A stretch of 63,994 bases of DNA, filler included, from Lenisia limosa (GCA_001655205.1; 13 parts of 13 records of this genome joined end to end with filler, not necessarily neighbours in it); one strand, 5' to 3'; shown: positions 31,476 through 46,252, counted from the whole stretch's first letter. Notes: generated by a model from the sequence alone, not told the origin. Translations and numbers: made by a program.

Positions 31476-31650
31476 CGATTGATATTGCTGAGTTCTGAAC
31501 AGCTGCAGTATCTAATATATTGTCTTCAACCACTTTTTGACTCACCCATTCTTTAGTTGCTAAGTTTGAAGTATCTATGTTTGTAGAAGTCGTGTTTATA
31601 GAGCCAGATCCGATTGTTGTGTTTTGAGAATAGTCACCGTGTAGTTCCAT
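31476..31650 (-). CDS. Putative virion fibre/spike protein, N-terminal 58 aa only (cut by scaffold edge)
   Basis: MELHGDYSQNTTIGSGSINTTSTNIDTSNLATKEWVSQK. ATKxWV resembles the ATKxYVD fibre repeat, and the gene lies directly downstream of the penton. Confidence 0.45.
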
Positions 31651-31679
31651 TTATAGAAAAAAAATATATTTTTAATTGT

Positions 31680-32438
31680 TTAATTAATTTCAATAATTAT
31701 TGTTGTAGAATCTCGAAGGCCATTTGGCATACCAAGAAGAACTCCGTTTTTGTTTGTTAATGAAAACTTCATCGAACTGATACTCGAAGAAGTCATTTTA
31801 TTTTTAATTTGAGTTAAATACTCCCTTGTGTAGCTTGCTAACTGGCCTGCCGCTACATTAATTGGAACAATTTCCATAATTGTTGAAACATCGGAATCAT
31901 TGTACTGACTTTCAATTCGGTTACAATGTACGTATACATTATCCAAACCGTTACTAAGGTCTGGAAAGTTTTCGGCTTCATGAATTACGTTGACAGTTTT
32001 ATCAACAAAAGCATCGTTTTCGACAACTTGAATAGTTTCAGTAGCACCAATGAGAACGTTTGATTCAAACCCGAAAAAGGACTTCATTTCCATTAAATCT
32101 AAAGTTACTCCTTCAAGTAACTGAATTCCAATTTTATAGGACCTAGTGTTTGAAGCAACATTTATCCAGTTGGGAGGAAGTTCAGGATAAAAGGCTTCGT
32201 TAATTTTTTCAGACAGCTTGTCAAAGCTGGAATATGAACCTGGTAAAATACTTCTTTCATATGTATTACCACCGTAGGTTACAGAAATTGAATTATTATC
32301 ATCGTTAATATTGTAGATGTAATTTGGAAAGGATAAATATTTAAGAGTCATAGTCGGATTAGATGACAATTTGAGAGAAGGATTGAATTCGATTTCATTT
32401 TCTGGACCAATGAATGTATATTTTAAAACTCGTGACAT
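31680..32438 (-). CDS. Minor capsid protein (penton, single jelly-roll)
   Basis: 252 aa with Polinton/PLV penton-type motifs FPNYIYNINDDNN, SILPGSY, NVYVHCNRIE and IMEIVPINVAAG. Same strand and cluster as the MCP. Confidence 0.85.
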   Translation of the reverse strand: MSRVLKYTFIGPENEIEFNPSLKLSSNPTMTLKYLSFPNYIYNINDDNNSISVTYGGNTYERSILPGSYSSFDKLSEKINEAFYPELPPNWINVASNTRSYKIGIQLLEGVTLDLMEMKSFFGFESNVLIGATETIQVVENDAFVDKTVNVIHEAENFPDLSNGLDNVYVHCNRIESQYNDSDVSTIMEIVPINVAAGQLASYTREYLTQIKNKMTSSSISSMKFSLTNKNGVLLGMPNGLRDSTTIIIEIN

Positions 32439-32458
32439 TTTTATAGGAAAATATATTT

Positions 32459-33094
32459 TTAATTATTATTTATTTTATTGACGATTTCCGAACGCGAAAT
32501 TCCCACAGCAGCACCGAGAGTGATAAGGATAGCGTTAAGAAAAAACCCTGTTAAAGCACCGCCAACGGTTACAGCAGCAGCTATACCGTATTTCTTTTTC
32601 CGTGAACTAAGTTTCAGGGAACCGTCTGTTTTCTGTAAATTGCCACGATAGTGTTCGTTGATGATTAGTTTCACCACTTTACCGTGATATTTGTAAGCCT
32701 GTTCTATTTGACGCTGACCTAAGTCACTTTCAACATAATTACAATATATGTTTAGTTTAGAAGTATCGACAGCTATCCAATTTTTCTCTCTTTTCAGCGT
32801 TTTATTCTTTTGACGTATTTCTAAAATATGTTTATCATTAATAAATCTATAACGATGGTCCAACCATTTCTCAGTAAGTTCCTTGAATTTTGTGAAGATT
32901 GCTGTTTCTATTGGTTCAACACCAGGTTCTTCCATACATTTTTCTTTGATACTTTGTTTATTATTGTGTTTTAGACATGGTTCGCCTCTTTTACTGTTTA
33001 ATACTTTACATCCACACTCTAGGACAACATTAAAGTCTTTTATTCGGGGTGGAGCCGATGGGTTAGGAATTTCGATGGGATACAAGTTTGACAT
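32459..33094 (-). CDS. Viral membrane-associated protein with N-terminal PSAP motif and C-terminal hydrophobic hairpin
   Basis: MSNLYPIEIPNPSAPP at the N-terminus; KKKYGIAAAVTVGGALTGFFLNAILITLGAAVGIS at the C-terminus. Confidence 0.65.
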   Translation of the reverse strand: MSNLYPIEIPNPSAPPRIKDFNVVLECGCKVLNSKRGEPCLKHNNKQSIKEKCMEEPGVEPIETAIFTKFKELTEKWLDHRYRFINDKHILEIRQKNKTLKREKNWIAVDTSKLNIYCNYVESDLGQRQIEQAYKYHGKVVKLIINEHYRGNLQKTDGSLKLSSRKKKYGIAAAVTVGGALTGFFLNAILITLGAAVGISRSEIVNKINNN

Positions 33095-33145
33095 TTATTG
33101 AAAAAAAAAGTTTTTTTTAATTTAAATTATTTTCATTTATTTCGC

Positions 33146-34555
33146 TTAGCTCTGTAAATCCGAATCCTCGACGAGTCTAGCATTTTTCTTTCTATCTTCT
33201 TTCTCTTTACGACGCATCGCAACAGTATCGAGTTTTTCGTTAAGTTCGAGTGGTGATTTATCGTTAACAATGGAAAATTTACCGTTACCATCACCGTCAT
33301 AAACAAGTGAAGCATCTTCATAAATTACCGTGTACATGTCGTAAACGTCGGTAGTTGCTTCTTCTAATTCAATAATATCTACAATCGTGTTATTTGTGTT
33401 TGTAAGGAACATATGTGTCCCAACTTCTGGTGTTGTTAGAACACTGTCAATCCAAATTCCACTGGTAGGGTCACGGAAATGCTTGCTACTTACCGGAAGT
33501 GGGGCTTTTAAGTCATCATACTTGCCACCGATGGATCGACGGAATCTATTAAAAGAAGGTGACACATCATTTTTCTCTAAATCATTTTCTTTACCCACGT
33601 CTGGGAATTGTTTTGAACCAATTTTACACGCGTGGTCTGTAATTCTTACCATAAATGGTCTCCATGGACGAGTGATATCGGGTTTAATAACAATAGTATC
33701 GATCAAACTTGCGTGGCTGTCAACAGTTCCAATTGACTTAGTTTTGGTTAAATTTGTTGGAATAGTGGTAGGATTAACATGGATCTTGGTGAAAGAAGTG
33801 GGGTAAGTCATACCTAATTTTTTAATTTTGTCTAAATACGATGCAGTCCCTTTGTTAGTGAGGTGAAGTTCACGTGCAGCTAAAATGATATTATCACGGT
33901 AGAGATGATTAGCCACAGCCACTGAGTTTTGCTCCATACTACCGATAATTGAATCGGCGCTTGTTTTAAAAGTAATATCAAACTGGTAAGTCTGTCCACC
34001 GGGTAACACGTAGTTTTCTTGAAAATAAGGGAAAAGTGCTCTTAAATGAATTTCACGATATACCCAGGCATTGTTTTTATATTTGCTAGTTCTTTTAGTA
34101 AGTTCCGTTGCAGTCTCTCCATCAAGGCGACTGTTGAAGATAAATTCATTTTCACCACCGTTTTCCAGGTAGTCGTCGTTATAGTATTTATGTTTTACAA
34201 TTTCTCCAATGATTTCTGGTTCTTCAATTTTTCCTAACACTTCTTTACCATTACATTTGATTGTAATTTCTTTAATTTGTGAATAACTAGAGTCTTTACA
34301 ATAAGCACCTGTGACTTCATGAGTTCCTGTATCGACATAATCTCCACCTAATTTTGTGAGTGAGATTTTTTCAGTCCACGAAAAGATAAAATTCGAACAT
34401 TCGAGAAATGTGGGATTTTCATCAGTGGTAGAACCTCCAATTCGGAAAGTATACTGGTCGCCTGAATTATTGGACGCTTCTTGGCGGACGTCTACAGCGC
34501 TTTCAATTTCGCTATTAATTGTTTTGTCATTAAATCTAAATATTCTGTCGGTCAT
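33146..34555 (-). CDS. Major capsid protein (double jelly-roll, Maverick/Polinton type)
   Basis: 469 aa, beta-rich. NNSGDQYTFRI..SNFIFSWTEKI..SQIKEITIKCNGKEV..YYNDDYLENGG..REIHLRALFPYF..LPGG..FDITF matches the Polinton MCP pattern, and the gene sits next to the penton. Confidence 0.85.
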   Translation of the reverse strand: MTDRIFRFNDKTINSEIESAVDVRQEASNNSGDQYTFRIGGSTTDENPTFLECSNFIFSWTEKISLTKLGGDYVDTGTHEVTGAYCKDSSYSQIKEITIKCNGKEVLGKIEEPEIIGEIVKHKYYNDDYLENGGENEFIFNSRLDGETATELTKRTSKYKNNAWVYREIHLRALFPYFQENYVLPGGQTYQFDITFKTSADSIIGSMEQNSVAVANHLYRDNIILAARELHLTNKGTASYLDKIKKLGMTYPTSFTKIHVNPTTIPTNLTKTKSIGTVDSHASLIDTIVIKPDITRPWRPFMVRITDHACKIGSKQFPDVGKENDLEKNDVSPSFNRFRRSIGGKYDDLKAPLPVSSKHFRDPTSGIWIDSVLTTPEVGTHMFLTNTNNTIVDIIELEEATTDVYDMYTVIYEDASLVYDGDGNGKFSIVNDKSPLELNEKLDTVAMRRKEKEDRKKNARLVEDSDLQS

Positions 34556-34608
34556 TTTTTAAGAAGAAAAAAATAAAATAAAAAACTTTTTTTTTATTTA
34601 AAAAAAAG

Positions 34609-35277
34609 ATGGATTATTCAGATAGCGATATTTCAAGTGACGACGAATTTAGATACTATAAAGATGGTGCAGGTTTATGGAACAAAGTTAGGAAATCAAC
34701 TAAAGCAGTAAAGAATGTTGTAAAAAAAGGAAATCAAGCTGCAAAAAGTGTTAAGAAAGAATTAGACAATGCTCGAAAAAACGAGTTAGTGAATACTGCC
34801 TGGGAAACCACCAAAGCAGCTGTACCTCAAATTGAAGCAGCAGAAAAAATAGCTAAAGTGGGCTACGATAACCTCGATAAAGCCGAAAAAATGACCGCAA
34901 TGGTGGACGATATGACAAATCGTATGTCTTCTGACCCTGAAAGTGTGGTAAAAGAAGTTGGCGGCTACATCGAGAAAATCGGAGATCTTTCAGAAGAAAT
35001 TAAATACCTAAAAGACAAAATTGACCGCCTTAAAAACGGAGGAGATGATAATAACAATGATAGTGACCTTGAGGACGAGAACTACGAGGAAAAGACTGGA
35101 GGCTGGGGTCCGGTAGCTGCTTTTGTTGCGACTTATGCTGCTACTAAAGCCGCCGACTATGCTTACGATAAATATGGTGGATTATCTTATTTACCCAACC
35201 ATGACTACGAAGGCGGAGGTTATATGACTTTACCCGAAGGAATTCCGGACTACAGAAAGTATCTAGTTAAAAACTAA
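34609..35277 (+). CDS. Putative virion core/membrane-lytic precursor protein
   Basis: 222 aa. DGAG is followed by the cationic amphipathic segment LWNKVRKSTKAVKNVVKK, and there are three KxGG sites (KNGG, KTGG, KYGG). Confidence 0.55.
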   Translation: MDYSDSDISSDDEFRYYKDGAGLWNKVRKSTKAVKNVVKKGNQAAKSVKKELDNARKNELVNTAWETTKAAVPQIEAAEKIAKVGYDNLDKAEKMTAMVDDMTNRMSSDPESVVKEVGGYIEKIGDLSEEIKYLKDKIDRLKNGGDDNNNDSDLEDENYEEKTGGWGPVAAFVATYAATKAADYAYDKYGGLSYLPNHDYEGGGYMTLPEGIPDYRKYLVKN

Positions 35278-35303
35278 AACAAAAAAAATATATTTTTTTT
35301 TTC

Positions 35304-36737
35304 CTAGTTGATGTATTTCTTAATTTGGAATAAGGGAATTCCTTTATTTTTGAGGGCATATATTAATTTAGCCTGGCTTTTACGAGTGAAACTATTAGAA
35401 TCGTTACTACCGTTGCCTTGTTTTATAAGTGCTGTAACTCGTTTTAGTTCTTCGACAATACGTTTCTTCGACCAGCTATTGGGAATATCGATTACTTTAG
35501 GTTCTTCGCTGAGAATTTTGAACTTTTCAGAACGTGGCCTAGCTTCTAGATTCCCGTGACCAACAACTTCTTTAAGTATCTTTTTAGATTTGTCTGAAAA
35601 ATTGTCGTTCTGATTCAACCTCTGCTTGGTAAGGAATCGGACAACTTCCTTGTCAACTGGTTCATGAATTTTACATTCACCGTCGACCATTAGATGTAGT
35701 ATATTATTGTGAAGGAGATCACCGACGTTGATTTCTGCCTCGCCTAATTTTCCATCGTTCGTTACGCAATAGTTACAGTGACTGGGTTGACGACGGGAAT
35801 AACCTTCACCTACAACAGTCATGTCTTTTCCATCTGTAATACTCTTATAAACGATATCGAAGAATTCATTTGGGGATATTTTTAGAGCAGTTCCAAAATC
35901 ACTGAGTGTTTTACCTGGTTGCGATGTTCCGTCTTTTATCCAGTCAAAACCCATATTAAATCCTAACTTTTGTCTTTTTGTGTTGTTGATGGAAGCTTTA
36001 TCTGGAGTGGAACTAGCGTTGTTTATACTGTACTTTTCTCCCAACCAATAAGCGAGCAATGAAGCTTTTTTCGTGGGGGATGAATTGTTGTATGTTTTAC
36101 CATGATTTTCCATCACATTTTTTACATTACTAAAGTAGTTTACAAGTAGGTTCTTGGTTTGCCGAGTGACAGCTAGTGACACAGTGTCATCGATTTTAAA
36201 GGAATGTCTTCCGTCTTTACCTATAAACCAACCGTCACCGTGCTTCACGGTAAAGAAGTCTCTTACTATATCCTCTTTAGGCTTAAAAAGATGTCTTGGT
36301 TTAACTGGTGTGTCGTCATCATCATCATCATCTTCTTCTTCTTTTTTAGGAGTTGAGTACTCGGGTTTACCAGCAATACGTACTCCCACTGGTCGGGGAA
36401 TAATGGAAGGAATTCTTGTAGCTGGTGCCATAGCGGGTGCTGTAGTTGTCGGGACGGCAGCAGTTTCCTTTTCTAAGGCAAACTTAATATCAGAAACGTC
36501 TTCTCGAATGGCACGGTTTTGTTCCATGGCCGTATTATACTTGAATTCTTTGTCTTTATTGATTTCGGCAGTAATTTTCTTTGATTTTTCTAAAGCATTC
36601 CTTTGAACACTGGTTTTTTTGGTATCAATATTGCCTCTATCATCCAGAATTACCGCATGTTGGGTTTGTTTATATTGGTCAGTTAGTTTTATTAACTTTT
36701 TTAGGGTAGATTGTTCTTTAAGAAGGTCTTCGTACAT
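35304..36737 (-). CDS. Uncharacterised viral protein, 477 aa
   Basis: Long intact ORF with a coiled-coil N-terminus and acidic tract. The C-terminal RIVEELKRVTALIKQGN..LIYALKNKGI resembles the conserved tail of an uncharacterised Maverick protein. Confidence 0.7.
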   Translation of the reverse strand: MYEDLLKEQSTLKKLIKLTDQYKQTQHAVILDDRGNIDTKKTSVQRNALEKSKKITAEINKDKEFKYNTAMEQNRAIREDVSDIKFALEKETAAVPTTTAPAMAPATRIPSIIPRPVGVRIAGKPEYSTPKKEEEDDDDDDDTPVKPRHLFKPKEDIVRDFFTVKHGDGWFIGKDGRHSFKIDDTVSLAVTRQTKNLLVNYFSNVKNVMENHGKTYNNSSPTKKASLLAYWLGEKYSINNASSTPDKASINNTKRQKLGFNMGFDWIKDGTSQPGKTLSDFGTALKISPNEFFDIVYKSITDGKDMTVVGEGYSRRQPSHCNYCVTNDGKLGEAEINVGDLLHNNILHLMVDGECKIHEPVDKEVVRFLTKQRLNQNDNFSDKSKKILKEVVGHGNLEARPRSEKFKILSEEPKVIDIPNSWSKKRIVEELKRVTALIKQGNGSNDSNSFTRKSQAKLIYALKNKGIPLFQIKKYIN

Positions 36738-36804
36738 TGTTGTTCTTTAACTGTAAATAAATACTTAAAAAAATTTTTTTTATTTTGTTTTTTTTTTACT
36801 AAAA

Positions 36805-38040
36805 ATGGAAAGTCGGAAAAAGCAATTCCTTGAGAACACAGAAAAACAACGAAATGAACAACAACATAATTCACCATTAACACCTTCTGGATGCGTAAGA
36901 ACCTTGATCATAGGAGGGTCTGGAAGCGGAAAAACAACAAGCTTTGTATATGATATTTTACCTGATAGAAAGTCTTCTGGTTATTTAATTTATTGTAGTA
37001 ACCCAAATCAACCCGTACTCAAAGATTTGAAGGCTTATGCTGATAGTAAAAACCTCTATTTTGAAATTATAACCAATTGGACAATAAATCCAACAATGAT
37101 TGAAGAATTAGCACGGGAAAATGCGTCAAAGGGTATAAGTTTTGAAGTTATTTTTGATGACGTGTCTGACAAGTCAAACTTTAAAACTATAGTTCCTCTT
37201 TTCACGGCTGGTCGGCATTACAATATTAGTCCAACACTTATTGTACACAAACTTAAAACAAATGCTAATCTTAACGAAATTAAGGACTCTTGTAATGCAT
37301 TTTACTCTTTTGGGTCTGGGTTGTCACAGGCTACTTTCTGTAAGTTTGCCAGGGACCTTCTCGACATCACTAACACAGAAATGAATAAAACTCACAATAA
37401 ACTTATGACGAGGGCGAAGAAAAATGGATTTCCCTTTTGCCTAGCAGTTTTCCCTGAGGAACCACATGACTACATGCGACTTCGGGCAGGTCATCGCGGA
37501 ATAATTTGGGACAGACTAAGTCCGGCAGAAAAAGAAGCCTTTGGGGTAGATCCCATTGATGGGGTGATCGAAATACCAACAGAATCGGAGACCAAGTCCA
37601 TTGACAAGAATTCAAAACCTCTATCAAATAAGGAAATAGATAATCATTTTGGTAGGCGTGTATGTTATATGAGTAACGAAGACTTTGTACTAGATAACTT
37701 CTTAGTCATCAACACGGGTAACCTCAAGGAAGAAACAGAAGGAGGTGTTCACTGGGTACTAATCTACAAATTGACCGACAAACTGGTTTTCTATTTTGAT
37801 AGTTTCGGTAATGAAGTTGACAACGAGTTAATTGGTAAACTTAAAGACTTTGAAGTTGTTAGAAACGACCTACAAATACAAGAAGACACATCTGCTTTGT
37901 GTGGGTACTACTGTATATCTGTAGCCGAATTACTTGACAAAAATGTCCCTTACTACCACTTGTACAAATACTTTAGCGGACCTTCAGAACAAAAAAATAA
38001 TATTAGTTTCCTTAATAATACGGCTCACGGTATAGAATAA
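36805..38040 (+). CDS. Fused A32/FtsK-like packaging ATPase and Ulp1/adenain-like cysteine protease
   Basis: ATPase: Walker A GGSGSGKTT (36913-36939), Walker B VIFDD and LFTAGRHYNIS. Protease, in the same frame: VINTG..GGVHWV..FYFDSFG..QIQ..LCGYYC (His-Asp-Gln-Cys). Confidence 0.93.
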   Translation: MESRKKQFLENTEKQRNEQQHNSPLTPSGCVRTLIIGGSGSGKTTSFVYDILPDRKSSGYLIYCSNPNQPVLKDLKAYADSKNLYFEIITNWTINPTMIEELARENASKGISFEVIFDDVSDKSNFKTIVPLFTAGRHYNISPTLIVHKLKTNANLNEIKDSCNAFYSFGSGLSQATFCKFARDLLDITNTEMNKTHNKLMTRAKKNGFPFCLAVFPEEPHDYMRLRAGHRGIIWDRLSPAEKEAFGVDPIDGVIEIPTESETKSIDKNSKPLSNKEIDNHFGRRVCYMSNEDFVLDNFLVINTGNLKEETEGGVHWVLIYKLTDKLVFYFDSFGNEVDNELIGKLKDFEVVRNDLQIQEDTSALCGYYCISVAELLDKNVPYYHLYKYFSGPSEQKNNISFLNNTAHGIE

Positions 38041-38380
38041 TATCGTTATCGCTTAGAATAATATCGACTTTTTCAGATCTACAAAGTCGAGTTATAGTTT
38101 GTACAACTTCATAGAGTTCTCTAAAATAACCTCTACGATGCCTATGTTCATCTAAGAGTTTCTGTTTTGGAAATTTAATTAAATTGTTTTCTTTTAAAAA
38201 CTTATACATATTAGAACCTTTGATTGAATGTGTGAATTTAACAAATCGTAAAGCTATTGTGGGTGTCACTTTCAACTGACAGATGTCACCACTAAACATT
38301 TCTTCATATTGAATATAAAGTTCGCGTACACCATATTCGTTTACATCAATAATTTCTCCGAGGATAAAACTTGGCTGCAT
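38012..38380 (-). CDS. Hypothetical viral protein, 122 aa
   Basis: The true start is likely MQPSF at 38380 (not 38419) because the element's upstream motif TTCTATAAAC directly precedes this ATG. Confidence 0.65.
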   Translation of the reverse strand: MQPSFILGEIIDVNEYGVRELYIQYEEMFSGDICQLKVTPTIALRFVKFTHSIKGSNMYKFLKENNLIKFPKQKLLDEHRHRRGYFRELYEVVQTITRLCRSEKVDIILSDNDIILYREPYY

Positions 38381-38468
38381 GTTTATAGAATAAAAAAAAT
38401 TAAAAAAAAAACATGTCATTTTTTTAAAAAAAGTAACATTAATTTTTTTATTATTTATTTTCTACCAA

Positions 38469-38888
38469 ATGAACTCCACCAAACTTTCGCAACACCAAAT
38501 GACTAACTTCCTCGAAGTCAAGGAAATCGTAAATGAATCCCAATACGAACTTTTCCCACGAATCGACTTCGAAGAAAATTCTTACACTTATTTTACTTAC
38601 GATATGCAACAAGGACTACTTAACACTATTAGAAGGTCAGAAAAATACAGTAAACTTTTTAAAGACAACATTGTTACCATTGAAAAAGGTAAAAAATTTA
38701 CAGAAGAAGACAAAGAGAAATCCAATGAACTTCTGGAAAAGGTCTATGAACTAGTTAATTCAGGTGAAATGAAAATGAAGATTAAACGAGGAAGAGAATA
38801 TGGTATGAAAAATGGTTACAAACAATACTTCTGGAACTTTGAGTTGAAGAAAAAAAATATTTTTTTTTTATATTATAAATCAGTTTAA
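38469..38888 (+). CDS. Hypothetical viral protein, 139 aa
   Basis: Intact ORF preceded by a T-tract and TTTTCTACCAAATG; converges on 38885-40114. Confidence 0.65.
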   Translation: MNSTKLSQHQMTNFLEVKEIVNESQYELFPRIDFEENSYTYFTYDMQQGLLNTIRRSEKYSKLFKDNIVTIEKGKKFTEEDKEKSNELLEKVYELVNSGEMKMKIKRGREYGMKNGYKQYFWNFELKKKNIFFLYYKSV

Positions 38889-40114
38889 AAAAGCCCCAAG
38901 GTAGGTACCCTGTCATCACAACTCCAGCCGCCCTCGTAACAAGCATCCATCATTTCTTCCTCAAATCGTTCTCGAATCTTCAATTCTTCTTCATTTTTTC
39001 TTTTTTGTATAAGAGTGATTATTTTTTCTTCTCTGTCTTCTATTACTGTTTCAGGAGTGGAAATGAAATACACTGGATAGAAACGGTCGTCATATGGACA
39101 TTCGTAAAAAGATAGATAAACTTTTTGGTCACCACAATATTCAAAAGAAACATTTCTATTGAGTATATAGAAATAAAATTTGTTAGTTTTAATATCTTGG
39201 ATTATTGCACAACGGATGTCTCCCCAATATTGGACAATTATAGCAGTCATAGCAGTATAATCATCTGGGAGGTCTTTTTCAACATCAGCATCAAAATAGA
39301 TGCGTGGAAGTAGTTTAGACGGTTTATAATTAGCATTATATACGTCTGTCTTGATAAATGTTTTTTCAATCTCTTCATCCCGTTCAACTCTAAAGTAATC
39401 TTTTAAAAGTCGATTTTCAATTGATACGTGTGGAGTAGAATATATGTTATTATACTGTAATTCATCTTTGTTTTTATATATCACCTTTATATCGGACCCT
39501 AGGTGATAGGCGATATTTTTAACTAGACACATAAGTTGAGATAATTTACTTGTATCTGTTCCAACCTCGTAAGCATTTGGTTTATCCCAAACTAAATTTA
39601 ACAAACCGTATAGTTCACTCTCGGCTATTTCATTGACTGGTTGATAAGTCAAAGCACTATTAATGACGTCCTTGTATTTAAACATATCAGTTAAATAATT
39701 CATTTCATTATCCTCGTGTGGACATTCCAATTCAGTATTTTCACAAATTAACTCGCGGGGTCTTAAATCCTCTTTTTCAAAATACAAACATAATAATTCT
39801 TCAAAACCCAAATCCTTGATAGAATGTATAACATCGTCTCTAAGTTCTTTACGTAATGTTTCTGCCATATCCTCCATAGAAACATTTTCTTTGCCAAAAT
39901 ATTTATCAAGGACCTCGAGTGATGGACATCTCACTCCATCAACTGTATATTCGAAACTTCCCACCTCTTCTGTTATGGGGTGCCCCCCTCGCATACTGTC
40001 ATAGCCTAGAAATATGTATTCATCGACATTAAACACACGTGTTAAATACCTTCTAGCCATTTTACCATTAATTATTTTAAATGAGTTCAATTTAATTGTC
40101 CTAATGTTGTGCAT
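38885..40114 (-). CDS. Hypothetical viral protein, 409 aa, acidic
   Basis: Intact ORF preceded by TTTCCTATAAACAAT-ATG; no recognisable domain. Confidence 0.75.
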   Translation of the reverse strand: MHNIRTIKLNSFKIINGKMARRYLTRVFNVDEYIFLGYDSMRGGHPITEEVGSFEYTVDGVRCPSLEVLDKYFGKENVSMEDMAETLRKELRDDVIHSIKDLGFEELLCLYFEKEDLRPRELICENTELECPHEDNEMNYLTDMFKYKDVINSALTYQPVNEIAESELYGLLNLVWDKPNAYEVGTDTSKLSQLMCLVKNIAYHLGSDIKVIYKNKDELQYNNIYSTPHVSIENRLLKDYFRVERDEEIEKTFIKTDVYNANYKPSKLLPRIYFDADVEKDLPDDYTAMTAIIVQYWGDIRCAIIQDIKTNKFYFYILNRNVSFEYCGDQKVYLSFYECPYDDRFYPVYFISTPETVIEDREEKIITLIQKRKNEEELKIRERFEEEMMDACYEGGWSCDDRVPTLGLF

Positions 40115-40238
40115 ATTGTTTATAGGAAATTTTTTTTTTTTTTTTTTTTNNNNNNNNNNNNNNNNNNNNNNNNNNNNNNNNNNNNNNNNNNNNNNNNNNN
40201 NNNNNNNNNNNNNNNNNNNNNNNNNNNNNNNNNNNNNN

Positions 40239-40490
40239 AAAGTATTTATGTAGTTCTTCTTCTATTTTATTATCTAAATCTTCCATTACGTTTAATCTTT
40301 TTTCTGAATGTTTTTTTGATTGAATATGTTTTTCAAAGGAAATTTTTGTTCGAAGTACCGTCTCGCAACATGGACAGTTATATTCGGTTTTTGATTCAAT
40401 TAATTTACAGGCGTTGTTGTCAATATGGTATTTCAAGGATTGTTTATTACAAAATTTTTTATTGCAAGTTTCACAGATATAGTCGGTCAT
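40239..40490 (-). CDS. Tandem C2H2-type zinc-finger protein (3' end lost in an N gap)
   Basis: YICETCNKKFCNKQSLKYHIDNNAC and YNCPCCETVLRTKISFEKHIQSKKH. Confidence 0.8.
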
Positions 40491-40664
40491 TGTTTTAAGA
40501 TAAATTTTTTTTATTTTTTTTTTATTTTTTTTTTAAAAATCAACAATTCTTTCATATTTAAATTTTCTCCATGGTAATTTAAATAATCTACTAAACGAAA
40601 AACAACTATCGGCTTTTTTTGTTTCATCCTGACCAATTGGTATTCCCGAAACCCAACTTCCACT

Positions 40665-41330
40665 TCATCTATGATGTCTCCCAGACCAAAGCGCACTCTT
40701 GTTAATATCAGAATTGTTTTTCATTTCTTCCGAACAATATTTTAAAGCATCACCATCTCTCGCAACAGCTTCCCTACAAACATAATAATTGTTTTTCATT
40801 TCTTCCGAACAATATTTTAAAGCATGTGGGTCTTTCCTCACAGCTTCCCTACAAATATCATAATCACTTTTCATTTCTTCCGAACAATATTTTAAAGCAT
40901 CACCATCTCTCGCAACAGCTTCCATACAAATACCATAATCATTTTTCATTTCTTTCGAACAATATTGTAAAGCATGTGGGTCTCCCCTCACAGCTTCCCT
41001 ACAAATATCATAATCATTTTTCATTTCTTTCGAACAATATTGTAAAGCATGTGGGTCTCCCCTCACAGCTTCCATACAAATATCACGAACATTTTTCATT
41101 TCGTCTGACAACGATTCAAAAACATCACCAGCGGTATTGACAATAGCTTGCTTGCAAATATCAGAATTATTTTTCATATCTTCCGAACAATATTTTAAAG
41201 CATATCCGCTATTACAGACAGCTGTCAAACAAATATCATAATTATTTTTCATATCATCTGAACAATTTTCTAAGGCGTATCCATTCTTTCCAACTCTCTC
41301 CTTGCAATCTTCATAATCATTATAAGTCAT
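40665..41330 (-). CDS. DUF4116-like repeat protein (8 x about 25 aa)
   Basis: Repeat unit DICxEAVxxDxxALxYCSxEMKNDY, visible as a 75-bp DNA tandem repeat. Confidence 0.85.
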   Translation of the reverse strand: MTYNDYEDCKERVGKNGYALENCSDDMKNNYDICLTAVCNSGYALKYCSEDMKNNSDICKQAIVNTAGDVFESLSDEMKNVRDICMEAVRGDPHALQYCSKEMKNDYDICREAVRGDPHALQYCSKEMKNDYGICMEAVARDGDALKYCSEEMKSDYDICREAVRKDPHALKYCSEEMKNNYYVCREAVARDGDALKYCSEEMKNNSDINKSALWSGRHHR

Positions 41331-41472
41331 CTTTATAGGAAAATTAAAATTCTTTTTTTTTATTATTTTTTTAAAAAAACGAGGTCTTTCTTAAAATTCA
41401 TGATTTTCAAAACAGGTCGTTTTTTTAAAAAAACACAAGTGGAAAAAAAAGAATTTTAATTTTCTTTAAAGG

Positions 41473-44400
41473 ATGGACGACTTGGAGAAAATGATTCGCG
41501 ATGAAGAAAAAAGAAATGCTCGCCGTAAGAGACAAAGAACATACGACTTTGGGTCAACATATTTAAACAAATTCATTAAACTAACAGAAGAAACCGATAT
41601 AGATTTTAAGGACATCGACATTTTAAACGATATACAAATGAAAAAACTAAGGGAAAAAAATGACTATGTTTTGGTGTCCGGACATTTAACCCTAGTATAC
41701 CATAAACAAGGTACAGGGGCTGAAGAACGTGAAAAGTCCTTTTGTCGTAATTGGCGTGGTGATCGTCAAATATTAGTTAACATATACGGAGAAAATCTCC
41801 CAGCTGAACCAGAAGGCAGAATGGACAACGACGTAAAATACTTTGGAAAAAATTTTACATACTTAATTCCCAAAAATACAAACATAGAAACCGAAGTTAT
41901 AACACAAACAGTTGAAACAGGTACTGTAGTAATAGTCCAAAACGGTTACGATGGACAGCTTGCCTATGTTGACAATGTTACAATAGATATTATTGAAAAG
42001 CCTACAGTCAGTGACCTTCTCATGAAGAGTTCAACTGATAACCTATGCCTCATTCACTGTATTGCCACCGCACTTGCTGGCAAAAAATACTATAAGTCAA
42101 AGAACTTTAACACTTTTCTCAAGGAATTCCGTGCTATAAGTAAAAAAGAAGATTCATTCAGTCTTCATGACCTCGAATGTTGGACACAGAATAATAAATA
42201 TGTGAAGTTTGTTATCGTTGGCTCTAACAATAGGAAACTCAGAGAGATAGGTGTCCCCAAAACAGCACATCATACAATCGGGCTTTACTACCATAACGAA
42301 CACGTTGAACTCATCTCCCCGGAGGACTTACGAAGAGTGGCCCAAGTCCAAGACGACTGTCTTCTTAGTATTAAAAACCAACGACAAAAGATAGAAATCA
42401 AAGGCAAGGAATGTTGTTACACTGGACAAAACACATGTTTCCAAAACGGTGAAACAACAATTGTCAATGAAATTTTCAACGACGAATTTATTGCTACCAA
42501 GAAGGCAGAAGGATATAGTATTATTTATGTTGATGAATACCATTTGAAGAAATACTTGGCAACTGTGAATGATATTAATCAAATTGAGGTTAATGCTAAG
42601 GGAAGCGTTGTACGGGTCGTAGTTAATGAAGTTATTTTAGAAGTAAAAAGAGAAGAAGAAGATACTTTCAAGCAAAAACGTGACAAAGTATATAAAGACT
42701 ACCCTTATGAAAACATTCAGGAAACTAGAACATTTGCCGCCCTAACGACCGCTCTCAGTGATTGTATTCTAGGTCAGATTCCTAAATCATACTATAACGA
42801 AGAGGTTAGACAACTTCAATACACTCACTTTGTTGGTCCAAGAACTGGACGAGTTTCAAACGAGGAAGAAGAAGTTGAAGTCGACTTAAAACGCTGCTAC
42901 CGTAATATACTTTATGACAATAAACACCCCTTTCCCATCTTTCAAAGCGTTGATAGCTTTGTTAGAATTGGTGAAATTAGTTCTACTGATGTTGTTCCTG
43001 GTGAATACATTGTGGCTCAACCATTTGAAATTTGCGGAGTTCCCATTGGGGCTGGAATTCTAAACTACGTTCTTATTAAGAAAGCCCTAGAGTGTTGGGA
43101 GAAAGGCCATCCTCGTACTACTAAGCCTGAAATTAGTCACGTTATGAAGGCTAGAAGAACTATAAAGGCTGACACTTTCAAACCACTTCTAAAGTATATT
43201 ACTGAGGAGTTAGACGATATCAAACGTATGCCGAATGAACTTACTGGACTACTCAACAAAAGAATCAGGCGTGAAACAGCAACCTACCTGGAAAAGAATG
43301 AACAACAAGTTTACTTCCAAATGTATCACAACTTCGATAAGGGTATTAAAACTAAACTTATAAATGTCTGTAAAAACGTCAACATTGTACATGAAACGAA
43401 AGAAATTCCCTTAAACAGCTGTCATTCTTCGATTTATCGCCAGATTATCCACCAGTGCTTCCTTCGACTTGCTGAAATCAATTTTACTATTGATGACTAT
43501 TCCAGCATTGTTGCTTATAAAACAGATGCAGTTTTCTATAAAAATACTGACTCTTTAGTTAATGTGAACAAGCTACCTTTCACAATTCATGTAAGTGAGA
43601 GTTATTCCAGACTTAAGAAACCAGTTAAAGTTAAGAAGAGTCAGCCACTTCCCAAAGAAGCTGCATGGAACAATGTTACTGAAGTTAATACTGAGGAAAA
43701 CTGTCTTGTTACTGGAATGCCTGGCTGTGGTAAAACAACTCTCTTATGTAAGCTCTACGAGAAGTTTGTGTCCGAAGGCAAATCAGTGGTGTGTCTCGCT
43801 TTTACTAATTTTGCTGTGTCGAATCTCAAAGACAGAGGCTGCAACGAGGCCTATACTTTGGACAGTTACTTCTTCAAAAGAAAAACAACAATCAAGAAAT
43901 ATGATGTTTACCTCATCGATGAATTCAGTACAATTTCAGCCATTCTCATGGGAAGGCTAATTAAACATTGCGGAGGTTCCTTAGTTTATCTCTTTGGTGA
44001 CCCAAACCAGTTACCATCTGTGGCTGAAAATAACTACAACTACGTCAATAACAAAGTGATCTGCCAGTGGATGAAAAACTTTTATAAAATGAAGTACATT
44101 GAAGCCTCTGGAAGGTACGACAACAAGATGAAAGAAATCCTCGAAAAGTTTACTGAAGATGGTGTATTGGACACAACACACTTTAAAGATATTGATTGGT
44201 CACTCGAAACAAACATTACGTTCACCAATGAACTTAGAAAGAAGATTAACCACCAACACTCTGCCTCGTCAAGTCAAAAGATAATTGCTACCAAGAATGT
44301 TCCTCCCAAGATTTTCAACTCCCAGATCTTTAAACGTATTGGTGAAAATACTGTACTACGAAATGAGAAAACTATTGAGCTCACAGACATACAGATTATT

Positions 44401-45186
44401 AATGCCGAGTTTGAACCTGCATACGCTATTACTTCCCATAAAATTCAAGGTACAACCCTGGAAGAAGACTACAACATCCATGTTGAAATGAAACCGGACG
44501 GAAAGACACCATACTTTAACAGAAATGCTTTATATGTCGCACTTTCTCGTTGCAAGACTGCAGATCAAATCCATATCACACAAGTAAACGGAGTAAAGTT
44601 TCATCCTGAAAAAGAAGATGATATCGTAAACATGAAACTTAGAAAGCCTGAAAAAGCTCTTATCTACAAAATCTACAATAAAGATGGTTCAGAATACGTT
44701 GGTAGTACTGTATGCGGACCTAGCCAAAGCGAGAAAGCTCGTTTGGAAAAACGATTCAAAGAACACGAAAGAGATGAAACACTTGCCTGGAAAAGGAACA
44801 TGGATAGAATTGAACTTCTTACCAGGGTTTACTACCACAACAAGGAGGAAATTGAAAGTCGATGGGAAAAGAAATTTATTGGTCAAATCACTGTAGAGTG
44901 TAACAATATTCGCTGTGTCAGTAAATGTGCTCCCACTAAAGGGTTTATTGAGCTACAAGAGGTCAGTACCCCTCTTCCAAAAGTTAATGATAACGGTAAA
45001 CAACTTAGATGTAAGTCAGGAGGAATAGATATAGTTGCCAAGTATGACGGAAGTGAAGATGGTCGTCAGAAAGCAATGAAAAAAATTTATAAAAAAATAG
45101 AAATTAAAATGAATAATATTTTATTACAAAGCAGATGGAACAGTTGTGGAATAAATATGGGTTCATGTCAAAAAATCGATTTATAG
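41473..45186 (+). CDS. Replication polyprotein: vOTU-like protease domain, protein-primed family B DNA polymerase, SF1 (RecD/Pif1-like) helicase and GIY-YIG nuclease
   Basis: DNLCLIHC/NEHVELI; PolB motifs DLKRCY (42883), KRMPNELTG (43222), YKTDAVF (43516); helicase GMPGCGKTT (43714), IDEFS, FGDPNQLP, AYAITSHKIQG, YVALSR; IYKIYNKDGSEYVGST (44662). Confidence 0.9.
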   Translation: MDDLEKMIRDEEKRNARRKRQRTYDFGSTYLNKFIKLTEETDIDFKDIDILNDIQMKKLREKNDYVLVSGHLTLVYHKQGTGAEEREKSFCRNWRGDRQILVNIYGENLPAEPEGRMDNDVKYFGKNFTYLIPKNTNIETEVITQTVETGTVVIVQNGYDGQLAYVDNVTIDIIEKPTVSDLLMKSSTDNLCLIHCIATALAGKKYYKSKNFNTFLKEFRAISKKEDSFSLHDLECWTQNNKYVKFVIVGSNNRKLREIGVPKTAHHTIGLYYHNEHVELISPEDLRRVAQVQDDCLLSIKNQRQKIEIKGKECCYTGQNTCFQNGETTIVNEIFNDEFIATKKAEGYSIIYVDEYHLKKYLATVNDINQIEVNAKGSVVRVVVNEVILEVKREEEDTFKQKRDKVYKDYPYENIQETRTFAALTTALSDCILGQIPKSYYNEEVRQLQYTHFVGPRTGRVSNEEEEVEVDLKRCYRNILYDNKHPFPIFQSVDSFVRIGEISSTDVVPGEYIVAQPFEICGVPIGAGILNYVLIKKALECWEKGHPRTTKPEISHVMKARRTIKADTFKPLLKYITEELDDIKRMPNELTGLLNKRIRRETATYLEKNEQQVYFQMYHNFDKGIKTKLINVCKNVNIVHETKEIPLNSCHSSIYRQIIHQCFLRLAEINFTIDDYSSIVAYKTDAVFYKNTDSLVNVNKLPFTIHVSESYSRLKKPVKVKKSQPLPKEAAWNNVTEVNTEENCLVTGMPGCGKTTLLCKLYEKFVSEGKSVVCLAFTNFAVSNLKDRGCNEAYTLDSYFFKRKTTIKKYDVYLIDEFSTISAILMGRLIKHCGGSLVYLFGDPNQLPSVAENNYNYVNNKVICQWMKNFYKMKYIEASGRYDNKMKEILEKFTEDGVLDTTHFKDIDWSLETNITFTNELRKKINHQHSASSSQKIIATKNVPPKIFNSQIFKRIGENTVLRNEKTIELTDIQIINAEFEPAYAITSHKIQGTTLEEDYNIHVEMKPDGKTPYFNRNALYVALSRCKTADQIHITQVNGVKFHPEKEDDIVNMKLRKPEKALIYKIYNKDGSEYVGSTVCGPSQSEKARLEKRFKEHERDETLAWKRNMDRIELLTRVYYHNKEEIESRWEKKFIGQITVECNNIRCVSKCAPTKGFIELQEVSTPLPKVNDNGKQLRCKSGGIDIVAKYDGSEDGRQKAMKKIYKKIEIKMNNILLQSRWNSCGINMGSCQKIDL

Positions 45187-46190
45187 ATTTTGTTTTAGGT
45201 GTAACGGATAAGTTTAGTAAAGAAGAAATATCAAAATACATAGATCACCAAGGAGAGCACGACTTATACAAAGCAAGAAGTAACCAGAAGAAATACTTTA
45301 GTCACTTCCCAGAATTTAAAGAAAACAAAGACAGGTATCAGTTGGATGTTTTGTATCTAGCAGGAAAGCATTATAATAGTTTAGCCCTTGTCTGTATTGT
45401 TATAAGGTCTCGATACCTCTGTATGCGACCAATAAAAAACACAAGTGCTGCTGAAACTTATAAGGCCTATCAAAGTATTTGTCAAGAAGTAGGAACTCCA
45501 GTTTCAGTTCAAGTCGACAGTGGAAGCGAGTTCGTAAATAAACTATGGAAGGAAAAACTGCCACCAACAGTTCTAATAGTAAACGACCCCTATGAAAAAA
45601 ATCAAAACGCCTATGTGGAGCGTGTTAACAAAACTATTTCAAAACCATTCTATGAAAGGATGAAGCGTATCGAGAATGTAACCGGAGGGCCGTCCACACA
45701 GTGGATTGAATTTTTAGCCGACCAAGTCTATTCCTATAACAGAACTACTCATTCAACGATCAAGCAAAAACCTTATGATGTACAGTTTAATGGTAAAACA
45801 CCAGCAAAACAAGAATGGAAGAAAGTACCCGAAGGTAAGTTGAAGACAGGTGATTTCGTGAGAGTTTTTATAGGTGATAAGGATTATAACAGGCATGTCT
45901 CGCCAATCTGGTCTGAAGAAATCTATGTTATCAAGTATTCATATAAGAATGGGCCTTACAACCCGACACGCTATCAAATTGCTCGATCTTATAGCTCTAC
46001 AATCGAACCTTTAACAAAATACGAATGGGAGCTATTGAAAGTCGAAAGTCTACAAATGAAACCAAATCTTGAGGGATTAAACGTTAAAAAGCCTGCTAAA
46101 CCAAGGAAAACTATTCAAGAGAACACTAGAAGTAAAAGAAAAGAGAGAAGACCAGAGAAGAAGAACAGATCTGGGTTAGTAAGAGAGTAA
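45135..46190 (+). CDS. Retroviral-type (rve) DDE integrase of Maverick type
   Basis: YQLDVLY (D 45345), QVDSGSEF (D 45516), NAYVERVNKT (E 45618), YNRTTHSTIK and the C-terminal LKTGDFVRV..WSEEIYVI. Catalytic triad intact. Confidence 0.95.
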   Translation: MEQLWNKYGFMSKNRFIDFVLGVTDKFSKEEISKYIDHQGEHDLYKARSNQKKYFSHFPEFKENKDRYQLDVLYLAGKHYNSLALVCIVIRSRYLCMRPIKNTSAAETYKAYQSICQEVGTPVSVQVDSGSEFVNKLWKEKLPPTVLIVNDPYEKNQNAYVERVNKTISKPFYERMKRIENVTGGPSTQWIEFLADQVYSYNRTTHSTIKQKPYDVQFNGKTPAKQEWKKVPEGKLKTGDFVRVFIGDKDYNRHVSPIWSEEIYVIKYSYKNGPYNPTRYQIARSYSSTIEPLTKYEWELLKVESLQMKPNLEGLNVKKPAKPRKTIQENTRSKRKERRPEKKNRSGLVRE

Positions 46191-46252
46191 TAAAGATCAA
46201 GATCAATGCTTTTGTTATTAAAGGTAAATGAACTCATACTCAAATTACGAAC

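What the first reader, a model, noticed from the sequence alone, without database searches (positions are those of the whole stretch)
31476..46190. Apparently intact Maverick/Polinton-type virus with the full morphogenesis, replication and integration gene set
Seen: at least 14 intronless, uninterrupted ORFs on one scaffold, in a window whose host genes are densely spliced. Known: MCP + penton + A32 ATPase + Ulp1-like protease + pPolB + rve integrase defines Mavericks/Polintons, which are endogenous dsDNA viruses. Inferred: the lack of visible stops or frameshifts in core genes suggests a recent or active element able to form virions. Two unusual gene fusions and several orphan genes suggest an undescribed lineage.
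Basis: partly seen in the sequence, partly recalled or inferred. Interest (0 to 1): 0.9.

Follow-up and report, generated by a model that had tools for sequence, protein, structure and literature searches.

The report
Integrated polinton-like virus, Tlr1-type replicase
This stretch is most of a roughly 17.6-kb virus-like DNA element inserted in a eukaryotic genome, with all visible genes unbroken; it belongs to the known Polinton/polinton-like group but has a polymerase-helicase fusion instead of a stand-alone polymerase, an unusual ATPase-protease fusion, and capsid candidates that could not be verified.

Summary
The piece carries 13 complete ORFs of 130 aa or more (0.025 expected by shuffling) and is 95% coding. 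An independent assembly of the same DNA bridges the N gap. It shows that the gap hides only a T-run and the 3' end of a zinc-finger gene.

- **Supported:** an A32-type packaging ATPase, an adenain-like cysteine protease and an rve integrase. An 84-bp inverted copy of the right end sits at the element's left end. A syntenic sister element in the same sample has perfect 39-bp TIRs and a 6-bp target-site duplication.
- **Not supported:** a stand-alone pPolB. The 1237-aa protein is a Tlr1-like helicase, that is, a pPolB-palm/SF1-helicase fusion with vOTU-like and GIY-YIG-like domains. This architecture was described in 2016 and 2024.
- **Unverified:** the MCP and penton. They have no homologues outside this sample, and the structure prediction failed (pLDDT 34).

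The ATPase-protease fusion is real. It is conserved in the sister element, and I found no report of it in the papers I read.

Neither end of the element lies in the piece. The host is unknown.

Verdict: a new member of a known kind, of moderate interest.

The parts
31476..31650 (-). First 58 codons of a 642-aa gene, the left-most gene of the element, cut by the piece's edge. Its layout is fibre-like: a conserved N-terminus, a variable middle, a heptad-rich stretch and a conserved beta-rich C-terminus.
   Evidence: The full gene is in L003 161-2089. It is 40% identical to the sister's 640-aa protein. It has no Pfam or PDB hit. The fibre role is inferred.
31680..32438 (-). 252-aa protein, the penton (minor capsid) candidate. 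Unverified.
   Evidence: It is 45% identical to the sister's 251-aa protein and is partly present in the degraded third copy. It has no hit in Pfam, PHROGs or hhalign, or in the JGI metagenome scan.
32459..33094 (-). 211-aa conserved protein with a hydrophobic C-terminal segment. Function unknown; possibly a virion membrane protein.
   Evidence: It is 38% identical to the sister's 215-aa protein and is also found in the third copy. It has no family hit.
33146..34555 (-). 469-aa protein, the major capsid protein candidate. Its fold was not established.
   Evidence: Among 1.84 billion representative proteins it has only 4 hits: itself, the sister's 475-aa protein at 34%, a fragment from the third copy, and a spurious repeat protein. 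It has no Pfam or PDB hit. The AF2 model has pLDDT 34.5. The Foldseek hits have TM 0.18 or less and are therefore meaningless.
34609..35277 (+). 222-aa conserved protein with a hydrophobic C-terminal segment. Function unknown.
   Evidence: It is 38.5% identical to the sister's 236-aa protein. Its only hits are sub-threshold.
35304..36737 (-). 477-aa conserved protein with an acidic low-complexity stretch. Function unknown.
   Evidence: Two segments are 26-40% identical to the sister's 586-aa protein. It has no family hit.
36805..38040 (+). 411-aa fusion protein. The A32-like packaging ATPase lies at about 36805-37509 and the adenain/Ulp1-like cysteine protease at about 37672-38037, with a variable linker between them.
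   Evidence: Pox_A32 scores 31.4 bits (cutoff 22.8). Peptidase_C5 scores 21.4 (cutoff 21.3) on the C-terminal 166 aa. The same single ORF (437 aa) occurs in the sister, with the Walker A and B motifs and the protease His, Asp, Gln and Cys invariant. The ATPase is a stand-alone gene in relatives L006 and L010, and in L010 a separate protease-like gene lies next to it.
38012..38419 (-). 135-aa ORF specific to this element (accessory region).
   Evidence: It has no homologue in the sister and no Pfam hit. In L003 it is called as 122 aa.
38469..38888 (+). 139-aa ORF specific to this element (accessory region).
   Evidence: It has no significant homologue.
38885..40114 (-). 409-aa ORF specific to this element (accessory region).
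   Evidence: It has no homologue in the sister and no family hit.
40150..40238 (.). Assembly gap (89 N). It stands for 92 bases: the rest of a T-run and the 3' end of the zinc-finger gene.
   Evidence: L003 is continuous across it and matches both flanks at 100%.
40239..40490 (-). Visible 84 codons of a zinc-finger gene with two C2H2 fingers. Its last 25 codons, which carry a four-Cys ribbon, lie in the gap.
   Evidence: It hits the Pfam families zf-met and zf-C2H2. The gene is a complete 109 aa in L003 10603-10932. It is weakly similar to the sister's 108-aa zinc-finger protein (E = 5e-4).
40665..41330 (-). 221-aa protein made of six DUF4116 repeats (tandem 75-nt units). A cargo gene that the sister lacks.
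   Evidence: Pfam DUF4116 hits at E = 7.5e-67 with 6 stretches. The tandem repeat is shown.
41473..45186 (+). 1237-aa replication protein of the Tlr1-like helicase (pPolB-S1H) type. Its regions are: a variable N-terminus (41473-41982); a vOTU-like Cys/His domain (about 42010-42342); a protein-primed PolB-type palm (about 42760-43647); an SF1B helicase (43672-44559); and a GIY-YIG-like C-terminus (about 44659-44922).
   Evidence: The SF1 helicase families hit at aa 734-1029. Nine aligned homologues keep C192 and H277, D471, K584/N588/G592 and T684-D685, plus the Walker motifs. An AF2 model of aa 170-1040 has palm pLDDT of 80-93. Foldseek matches Pif1, RecD2 and Dda helicases, and also phi29 DNA polymerase (E = 3.6e-5) and mavirus, bidnavirus and tectivirus polymerases. 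The C-terminus aligns to the GIY-YIG domains of P0011 and P0012. The architecture is as published in PMC5499653 and PMC11161782.
45135..46190 (+). 351-aa rve (retrovirus-like) integrase. The catalytic core lies at about 45327-45764. The ORF overlaps the end of the replicase gene by 52 nt.
   Evidence: Pfam rve scores 22.4 bits, below its cutoff. A five-sequence profile hits HTLV-2, PFV and HIV integrase cores at E = 3e-12, with D71 and D128 invariant. The integrase follows the replicase gene in all relatives as well.
46253..46813 (+). 186-aa ORF, the last gene before the right end. Unknown function. The sister has an ORF at the same position but with no detectable sequence similarity.
47108..47194 (.). 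Inner part of the right terminal inverted repeat. The piece ends inside it.
   Evidence: L003 1-84 is its reverse complement (97.6% over 84 columns). L003 stops there, so the outer limit is unknown.
31660..38866 (.). Five intergenic sites of an A/T palindrome-like motif (AAAAWATWTTTTT) at 31660-31673, 32448-32460, 35284-35297, 36767-36780 and 38851-38866. They are candidate promoter elements lying 10-25 nt upstream of start codons.
   Evidence: There are 11 matches against 0.19 expected from shuffles, all of them intergenic. Similar words precede genes in the sister element. Enrichment over a purely A/T background is only several-fold by my own estimate.

Best explanation
The piece is the central 15.7 kb of an endogenous polinton-like virus of at least 17.6 kb, inserted in a eukaryotic chromosome.

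Shown:
- It encodes a packaging ATPase fused to an adenain-like maturation protease.
- It encodes a multidomain replicase of the Tlr1-like (pPolB-S1H) type and an rve integrase.
- It has inverted terminal sequence.
- A complete, syntenic sister element in the same sample has perfect 39-bp TIRs and a 6-bp target duplication.

Inferred from the families involved:
- The integrase inserts the linear genome and makes the 6-bp duplication.
- The replicase copies the genome from the inverted ends by protein priming. The vOTU-like domain would cut the priming part off, the palm would polymerise, and the SF1B helicase would unwind.
- The conserved block on the minus strand (469, 211, 252 and 642 aa) would supply the capsid shell, a membrane protein, the vertex protein and a fibre.
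- The ATPase would package the DNA and the attached protease would mature the capsid.

The variable block between the ATPase-protease gene and the replicase gene holds lineage-specific cargo: the zinc finger, the DUF4116 gene and orphan ORFs.
For: - **Gene density:** ORF density far exceeds chance, and coding is 95%.
- **Morphogenesis enzymes:** Pox_A32 and Peptidase_C5 hits, with catalytic residues conserved in the sister.
- **Replicase:** SF1 helicase Pfam hits. Invariant vOTU Cys/His and polymerase motif A, B and C residues in 9 homologues. Fold matches to SF1B helicases and to protein-primed PolBs of phi29, mavirus, bidnaviruses and tectiviruses. This is the architecture described in PMC5499653 and PMC11161782.
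- **Integrase:** the profile hits retroviral integrase cores at E = 3e-12.
- **Ends:** an 84-bp inverted match between the left end of L003 and 47108-47189.
- **Sister element:** 17,454 bp, the same gene order, ten proteins 26-45% identical, perfect 39-bp TIRs and the TSD GGTTAA.
- **Integration:** host-like flanks at 42-50% GC without long ORFs, against about 35% GC in the element. A 279-bp repeat is shared by the flanks of both elements. SPAdes coverages are 34, 39 and 36, so the copy number equals that of the flanks.
- **Relatives:** metagenomic relatives show the same replicase-then-integrase order and carry an A32 ATPase.
Against: - The two capsid candidates have no detectable relative outside this sample, and their folds could not be predicted. 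The capsid module is therefore assumed, not shown.
- The protease hit is at the threshold, and PDB profile searches give nothing for it.
- Neither the vOTU-like nor the GIY-YIG-like domain has a named hit of its own. The vOTU call rests on conserved residues plus the literature. The GIY-YIG call rests on alignment to PF01541-positive relatives.
- The outer limits of the TIR and the TSD of this copy lie outside the piece and outside contig L003.
- The host is unidentified.
- Unbroken ORFs show recent insertion or continued selection, not activity.
Confidence: 0.8

Rival explanations
1. It is a canonical Maverick/Polinton, with a stand-alone protein-primed family B polymerase alongside the rve integrase, ATPase, protease, MCP and penton.
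For: The element has an rve integrase, an A32 ATPase, an adenain-like protease and inverted terminal sequence, and the sister has a 6-bp TSD. The palm of the large protein matches protein-primed PolBs by fold. A 2026 preprint places elements with polB-SF1 replicases inside 'group 2 Maverick-Polintons'.
Against: No ORF hits a PolB family in Pfam. The only polymerase-like region is a palm inside a 1237-aa protein that continues into an SF1B helicase. No exonuclease domain is recognisable, and the first Asp of motif C is absent, as in Tlr1-like helicases.
Confidence: 0.1
2. It is a virophage-like PLV whose genes are read by the transcription machinery of a co-infecting giant virus, so that it stays silent in the host until such an infection. 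This does not exclude the best explanation.
For: A conserved A/T-rich palindromic word lies 10-25 nt upstream of many start codons in both divergent elements. Reactivation of integrated PLVs and virophages by giant viruses is documented for other hosts (abstracts listed). DUF4116 repeat and zinc-finger cargo genes are present.
Against: The motif is only modestly enriched over an A/T-only background and could be an ordinary host core promoter. No giant-virus sequence or late transcription factor gene was seen in any locus. The host and its viruses are unknown.
Confidence: 0.15
3. It is a capsid-less mobile element, transposon- or plasmid-like and akin to a large transpoviron. On this reading the 469-aa and 252-aa proteins are not capsid proteins.
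For: No sequence or structure evidence ties these two proteins to jelly-roll capsid proteins. Transpovirons share the replicase family and lack capsid genes.
Against: A packaging ATPase and a maturation protease have no known role without a capsid. The conserved block has the sizes and order typical of MCP/penton modules. Several double jelly-roll capsid proteins appear among the unreliable Foldseek hits; this is a hint only.
Confidence: 0.05
4. It is a free virus genome or a contaminant contig joined to host sequence by mis-assembly, not an integrated copy.
For: The element differs in GC from its flanks. The window scaffold contains a gap. The ENA assembly breaks inside the DUF4116 repeats.
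Against: Two independent assemblies agree at 100%. Contig L001 runs from the replicase gene through the right end into 25 kb of flank. The sister element lies within a single contig, between TIRs, with a 6-bp duplication and flanks on both sides. Coverage of the element-only contig (34) is close to that of the contigs that carry both element and flank (36 and 39).
Confidence: 0.03

Closest known systems
Tlr1 elements of Tetrahymena thermophila (a PLV with an rve integrase and the founding Tlr1-like helicase)
   Same: A linear element with inverted ends and an rve integrase. A large 1000-1400-aa replicase with vOTU, pPolB palm, SF1 helicase and a C-terminal GIY-YIG domain. An A32 ATPase plus a capsid module (PMC5499653 and PMC11161782).
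   Different: Tlr1 is reported to lack a protease, whereas here a protease is present and fused to the ATPase. No sequence similarity to Tlr1 proteins was tested, because no Tlr1 sequence was available to the tools. The standard genetic code is used here.
Metagenomic Tlr1-like PLVs found here (L006 from JGI 3300042967; L007-L009 from a crustacean metagenome and two other ENA metagenome assemblies; L010 from JGI 3300071517)
   Same: The replicase is of the same family (19-23% identity over the full length, with invariant catalytic residues). It is followed directly by an rve integrase, and an A32 ATPase is present.
   Different: Their ATPase is a stand-alone gene. In L010 a separate 152-aa protease-like gene lies beside it. 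Some carry HNH instead of GIY-YIG. Their structural genes show no detectable similarity to those here.
Maverick/Polinton elements in the strict sense, and the 'group 2' Maverick-Polintons and Gossevirus PLVs of the 2026 framework preprint
   Same: An rve integrase, an adenain-like cysteine protease, an A32 ATPase, TIRs and a 6-bp TSD (in the sister). Group 2 is said to swap pPolB for polymerase-helicase fusions, and Gosseviruses keep the protease as a core gene.
   Different: There is no stand-alone pPolB with an exonuclease domain. Membership of any of these MCP-defined groups cannot be tested, because the MCP candidate has no detectable relatives.
Transpovirons of mimivirids
   Same: They encode the same replicase family (pPolB palm fused to an SF1 helicase) and a zinc-ribbon protein gene next to the helicase gene. 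The best BFVD fold match was the unnamed entry H6WBE3 at E = 7.5e-21; I cannot confirm its identity.
   Different: Transpovirons are about 7 kb, lack ATPase, protease, integrase and capsid genes, and live in giant viruses.

Membership tests
Maverick/Polinton (strict definition) | [quoted passage not shown] | tested here: not met
   There is no PolB Pfam hit in any ORF. Only a palm domain is present, inside a 1237-aa protein fused to an SF1B helicase.
Maverick/Polinton (strict definition) | Retrovirus-like (rve) integrase | tested here: met
   The protein's own Pfam rve hit is weak at 22.4 bits. A profile of this protein with 4 relatives hits retroviral integrase catalytic cores at E = 3e-12, with two catalytic Asp invariant.
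Maverick/Polinton (strict definition) | Terminal inverted repeats | tested here: met
   An 84-bp inverted match (97.6%) links the left end of L003 and 47108-47189, though its outer limit is unseen. The sister has perfect 39-bp TIRs.
Maverick/Polinton (strict definition) | 6-bp target-site duplication | tested here: inconclusive
   It is met in the sister element (GGTTAA on both sides). For the copy in the window the termini lie outside both the piece and contig L003.
Polinton/PLV morphogenetic module | A32/FtsK-type genome-packaging ATPase | tested here: met
   Pox_A32 scores 31.4 bits against a cutoff of 22.8, and the Walker A and B motifs are conserved in the sister.
Polinton/PLV morphogenetic module | Adenain/Ulp1-like cysteine protease | tested here: met
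   Peptidase_C5 scores 21.4 bits against a cutoff of 21.3 on the excised domain, so the hit is marginal. His, Asp, Gln and Cys are invariant between the two elements. The profile also hits a separate 152-aa gene in L010 at E = 8e-11.
Polinton/PLV morphogenetic module | Double jelly-roll major capsid protein | tested here: inconclusive
   AF2 with a 3-sequence alignment gave pLDDT 34.5. Foldseek TM scores are 0.18 or less. There is no Pfam, PDB or hhalign link.
Polinton/PLV morphogenetic module | Single jelly-roll penton (minor capsid) protein | not tested
   No sequence-level hit was found.
PLVs with a Tlr1-like helicase (pPolB-S1H fusion) | Large (1000-1400 aa) protein with an SF1B helicase in its C-terminal part | tested here: met
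   The protein is 1237 aa. AAA_19, Viral_helicase1 and AAA_30 hit at aa 734-1029. Fold matches go to Pif1, RecD2 and Dda.
PLVs with a Tlr1-like helicase (pPolB-S1H fusion) | Protein-primed PolB-type palm with motifs A, B and C upstream of the helicase, and no exonuclease domain | tested here: met
   D471, K584/N588/G592 and T684-D685 are invariant in 9 homologues. The palm has pLDDT 80-93. Fold matches go to phi29 DNAP (E = 3.6e-5) and to mavirus, bidnavirus and tectivirus polymerases.
PLVs with a Tlr1-like helicase (pPolB-S1H fusion) | vOTU-like cysteine protease domain with conserved Cys and His before the palm | tested here: inconclusive
   C192 and H277 are invariant in 9 homologues, and the region is well predicted (pLDDT 71-88). 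No named OTU hit was obtained, so the assignment follows PMC11161782.
PLVs with a Tlr1-like helicase (pPolB-S1H fusion) | C-terminal homing-endonuclease domain (GIY-YIG or HNH) | tested here: inconclusive
   The protein's own C-terminus has no Pfam hit. It aligns, with conserved Tyr/Gly, Arg and Glu positions, to the PF01541-positive domains of P0011 and P0012.

The most novel reading that the evidence does not exclude
The element and its sister may represent a deep, so far unsampled lineage of the Polinton/PLV supergroup. In this lineage the capsid proteins would have diverged beyond all current detection, or been replaced by an unrelated shell. Genome packaging and capsid maturation would be carried out by one ATPase-protease polypeptide, an arrangement I found in none of the papers I read. 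The lineage would have persisted as several divergent, still unbroken copies in one host genome.
Probability: 0.2. Interest if true: 0.6.

Novelty: new member of a known kind. Interest (0 to 1): 0.4.

Why it matters
[quoted passage not shown] This host carries two divergent, unbroken, syntenic elements, one of them with perfect ends and an intact target duplication. That gives a clean reference for a Tlr1-type lineage that keeps the maturation protease. It also adds a conserved ATPase-protease fusion to the catalogue of gene architectures. The capsid candidates have no relatives among 1.8 billion representative proteins, which illustrates how much capsid diversity sequence searches still miss.

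Tried and rejected
- **MCP candidate.** Tried phmmer against 1.84 billion representatives, PDB, Pfam at E up to 10, PHROGs, an IMG/VR scan, HMM and hhalign against all ORFs of three related PLV contigs, AF2 and Foldseek. None was informative. The apparent hit P0006 is a translated tandem repeat that matches one 21-aa word many times.
- **Penton candidate.** The same searches plus a JGI metagenome scan found nothing.
- **ATPase-protease fusion.** The protein search found only itself, the sister and one weak protease-only match, P0009. The IMG/VR and JGI scans found nothing, and the PDB profile search gave nothing.
- **Palm and vOTU region.** The sequence profile against PDB gave nothing. Only the fold search worked.
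- **Host identity.** The sample accession appears in no paper. The flanks contain no Rfam family or tRNA and no Pfam hit in their ORFs. In my reasoning I guessed that one flank ORF was a DDE transposase; Pfam does not support this, and I withdraw it.
- **Literature.** I found no report of an ATPase-protease fusion in polintons, PLVs or virophages. This is weak negative evidence.

2. The script printed per-frame tblastn segment bounds on the degraded third copy. That shows roughly where one break lies.
3. The DNA search has no range option, so one search scanned the whole window. All matches fell inside the piece.

Full report
**1. Gap and observation**

The gap was tested first. ENA contig NODE_1472 (L003, 11,215 bp, sample ERZ3820729) is 100% identical to 31476-40149 and to 40239-40773, and it is continuous between them. 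The 89 N replace 92 bases. These are the remainder of a T-run of about 30 bases and the last 25 codons plus the stop of a zinc-finger gene on the minus strand, which is a complete 109 aa in L003. The 409-aa ORF to the left starts outside the gap. The gap therefore breaks nothing.

A second contig (L001, NODE_287, 30,995 bp) is 100% identical to 41048-47194 and continues into flanking DNA.

The piece holds 13 complete ORFs of 130 aa or more, against 0.025 expected from shuffles. Coding is 95%. The adjoining flank has no ORF above 185 aa.

**2. Extent and ends**

The piece contains neither end of the element. On the left it starts inside a 642-aa gene, whose remainder and a further 160 bp are in L003. 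The first 84 bases of L003 are the reverse complement of 47108-47189, with two differences. This is a terminal inverted repeat whose outer limit is unseen, because L003 stops there and the piece ends at 47194. The element is therefore at least 17.6 kb.

Beyond the piece, L001 shows further subterminal direct repeats. GC then rises from about 35% to 42-50%, with no long ORFs, which is host-like DNA.

**3. A sister element and a decayed copy in the same sample**

Contig NODE_320 (L002 and L004) carries a syntenic element. Ten of its proteins are 26-45% identical to those here. It is complete: 17,454 bp, perfect 39-bp TIRs, and the hexamer GGTTAA on both sides, which is a 6-bp target-site duplication.

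The flanks of the two elements share a 279-bp repeat at 94% identity. SPAdes coverages are 34 for the element-only contig and 36 and 39 for the contigs that carry both element and flank. Both elements therefore sit in one genome at the same copy number as their flanks.

A third contig (L005, coverage 44) holds a partial, degraded copy that is closer to the window's element (47-74% identity). Only the C-terminal fifth of the capsid-candidate homologue can be aligned. The 211-aa homologue carries one frameshift. The 252-aa homologue can be aligned over only about 54 residues.

No gene of the window's element is broken.

**4. What the genes are**

*ATPase-protease (36805-38040).*
- The N-terminal half hits Pox_A32 above its cutoff.
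- The C-terminal 166 aa hit Peptidase_C5 just at the cutoff.
- The sister has the same single ORF (437 aa). Its Walker motifs and the protease His, Asp, Gln and Cys are invariant, and the linker between the two halves is variable. The fusion is therefore real and conserved.
- In relatives L006 and L010 the ATPase is a separate gene. In L010 a 152-aa protease-like gene lies next to it.

*Integrase (45135-46190).* Its own Pfam hit is weak. A profile of it with four relatives hits retroviral integrase cores at E = 3e-12.

*Replicase (41473-45186, 1237 aa).*
- It is not a stand-alone pPolB. Pfam sees only an SF1 helicase at aa 734-1029.
- Seven distant homologues of 1220-1503 aa were found. Some end in GIY-YIG and some carry HNH.
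- In the nine-sequence alignment the invariant positions are a Cys and a His (192 and 277), an Asp (471), a Lys-Asn-Gly set (584, 588, 592), a Thr-Asp pair (684-685), and the helicase motifs.
- An AF2 model of aa 170-1040 is confident in the palm (pLDDT 80-93).
- By fold it matches Pif1, RecD2 and Dda helicases. It also matches phi29 DNA polymerase (E = 3.6e-5) and the polymerases of mavirus, bidnaviruses and tectiviruses.
- This is the TP-vOTU-palm-S1H-endonuclease architecture described for 'Tlr1-like helicases' in PMC5499653 and PMC11161782. The later paper predicts that the palm is an active polymerase.

*Other genes.* These are a C2H2 zinc finger with a C-terminal Cys ribbon, a six-repeat DUF4116 protein, and several orphans.

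**5. What could not be shown**

The 469-aa MCP candidate and the 252-aa penton candidate have no relatives outside this sample in any search.

AF2 on the three available MCP sequences gave pLDDT 34.5. The Foldseek list from that model has TM scores of 0.18 or less. A handful of double jelly-roll capsid proteins appear in it, but this cannot be counted as evidence.

The capsid role rests on four things:
- the presence of a packaging ATPase and a maturation protease;
- the sizes and order of the genes;
- their conservation among three copies;
- a shared upstream A/T-rich word.

**6. Mechanism**

*Shown:* the gene content, the inverted ends, integration in host DNA, and a 6-bp duplication in the sister.

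*Inferred from the families:*
- rve-mediated insertion;
- protein-primed replication from the ends by the multidomain replicase;
- assembly of an icosahedral particle from the minus-strand structural block, with packaging and maturation by the fused enzyme.

Unbroken genes and near-identical ends argue for recent insertion. They do not show activity.

**7. Comparison and verdict**

The closest described kind is the Tlr1-type polinton-like virus, which has an rve integrase and a Tlr1-like helicase ending in GIY-YIG. The element differs in keeping a protease, which Tlr1 lacks, and in fusing it to the ATPase.

Under the strict definition of Mavericks/Polintons, the pPolB feature was tested and not met. 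A 2026 preprint, however, groups elements with polB-SF1 replicases among 'group 2 Maverick-Polintons' and notes that replication modules are swapped often. The boundary is therefore partly one of naming.

For the other (ATPase-protease) I found no report in the papers I read.

I rate this a new member of a known kind, with interest 0.4.

**8. Declared slips**

These are listed under Tried and rejected: motifs recalled from memory in my reasoning only; per-frame segment bounds printed; and the whole-window scan.

Noticed in passing
L002 (about 590 bp before its start) to 16859, equal to L004 1-15191 (contig NODE_320 of ERZ3820729): A complete sister element of 17,454 bp in the same sample. It has the same gene order, perfect 39-bp TIRs and the 6-bp target duplication GGTTAA. 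Its proteins are only 26-45% identical to those of the window's element.
   Followed up: yes
L005 (contig NODE_3492 of ERZ3820729), right-hand third: A third, partial and degraded copy, closer to the window's element (47-74% aa identity). Only the C-terminal fifth of the capsid-candidate homologue can be aligned. The 211-aa homologue has one frameshift. The 252-aa homologue can be aligned only in part.
   Followed up: partly
window 31660-31673, 32448-32460, 35284-35297, 36767-36780, 38851-38866; similar sites in L002 and L004: An A/T-rich palindrome-like word (AAAAWATWTTTTT) lies 10-25 nt upstream of many start codons in both divergent elements. It is often followed by a TATAAA-like word directly before the ATG. 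It may be a shared promoter element; whose polymerase reads it is unknown.
   Followed up: partly
window 40704-41273: The DUF4116 gene is a tandem array of 75-nt units (7.6 copies). Both ENA contigs end inside it (at 40773 and 41048), so 40774-41047 is covered only by the window's scaffold and the repeat number there is supported by that assembly alone. The sister element lacks this gene.
   Followed up: partly
L001 6050-6640, just beyond the piece's right edge: Two families of subterminal direct repeats lie outside the 84-bp inverted match: units of about 120 bp near 6050 and 6220, and units of about 70 bp near 6455 and 6545. The true TIR may therefore be several hundred bases long.
   Followed up: no
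L001 9376-9653 and L002 23138-23414: A 279-bp sequence is shared at 94% identity by the host flanks of the two elements. It is probably a dispersed host repeat. It shows that both contigs come from one genome.
   Followed up: no
window 45135-45186: The integrase ORF overlaps the end of the replicase ORF by 52 nt and has no upstream A/T word of its own. In the sister the two genes are separated by a 30-bp spacer that carries the motif. The real start codon of the window's integrase may lie further downstream.
   Followed up: no
P0009 (303 aa, from the protein search): An unrelated protein in which precomputed Pfam finds a parvovirus-VP1-type phospholipase domain (PF08398). Its only match to the fusion query covers 16% of the query (40% identity), in the protease part. 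It is another example of the protease being fused to a different partner.
   Followed up: no
BFVD entry H6WBE3: The best fold match of the replicase model (E = 7.5e-21 over 766 columns) is a 999-aa viral protein with no name in the tables at hand. I suspect it is a transpoviron helicase but could not check.
   Followed up: no
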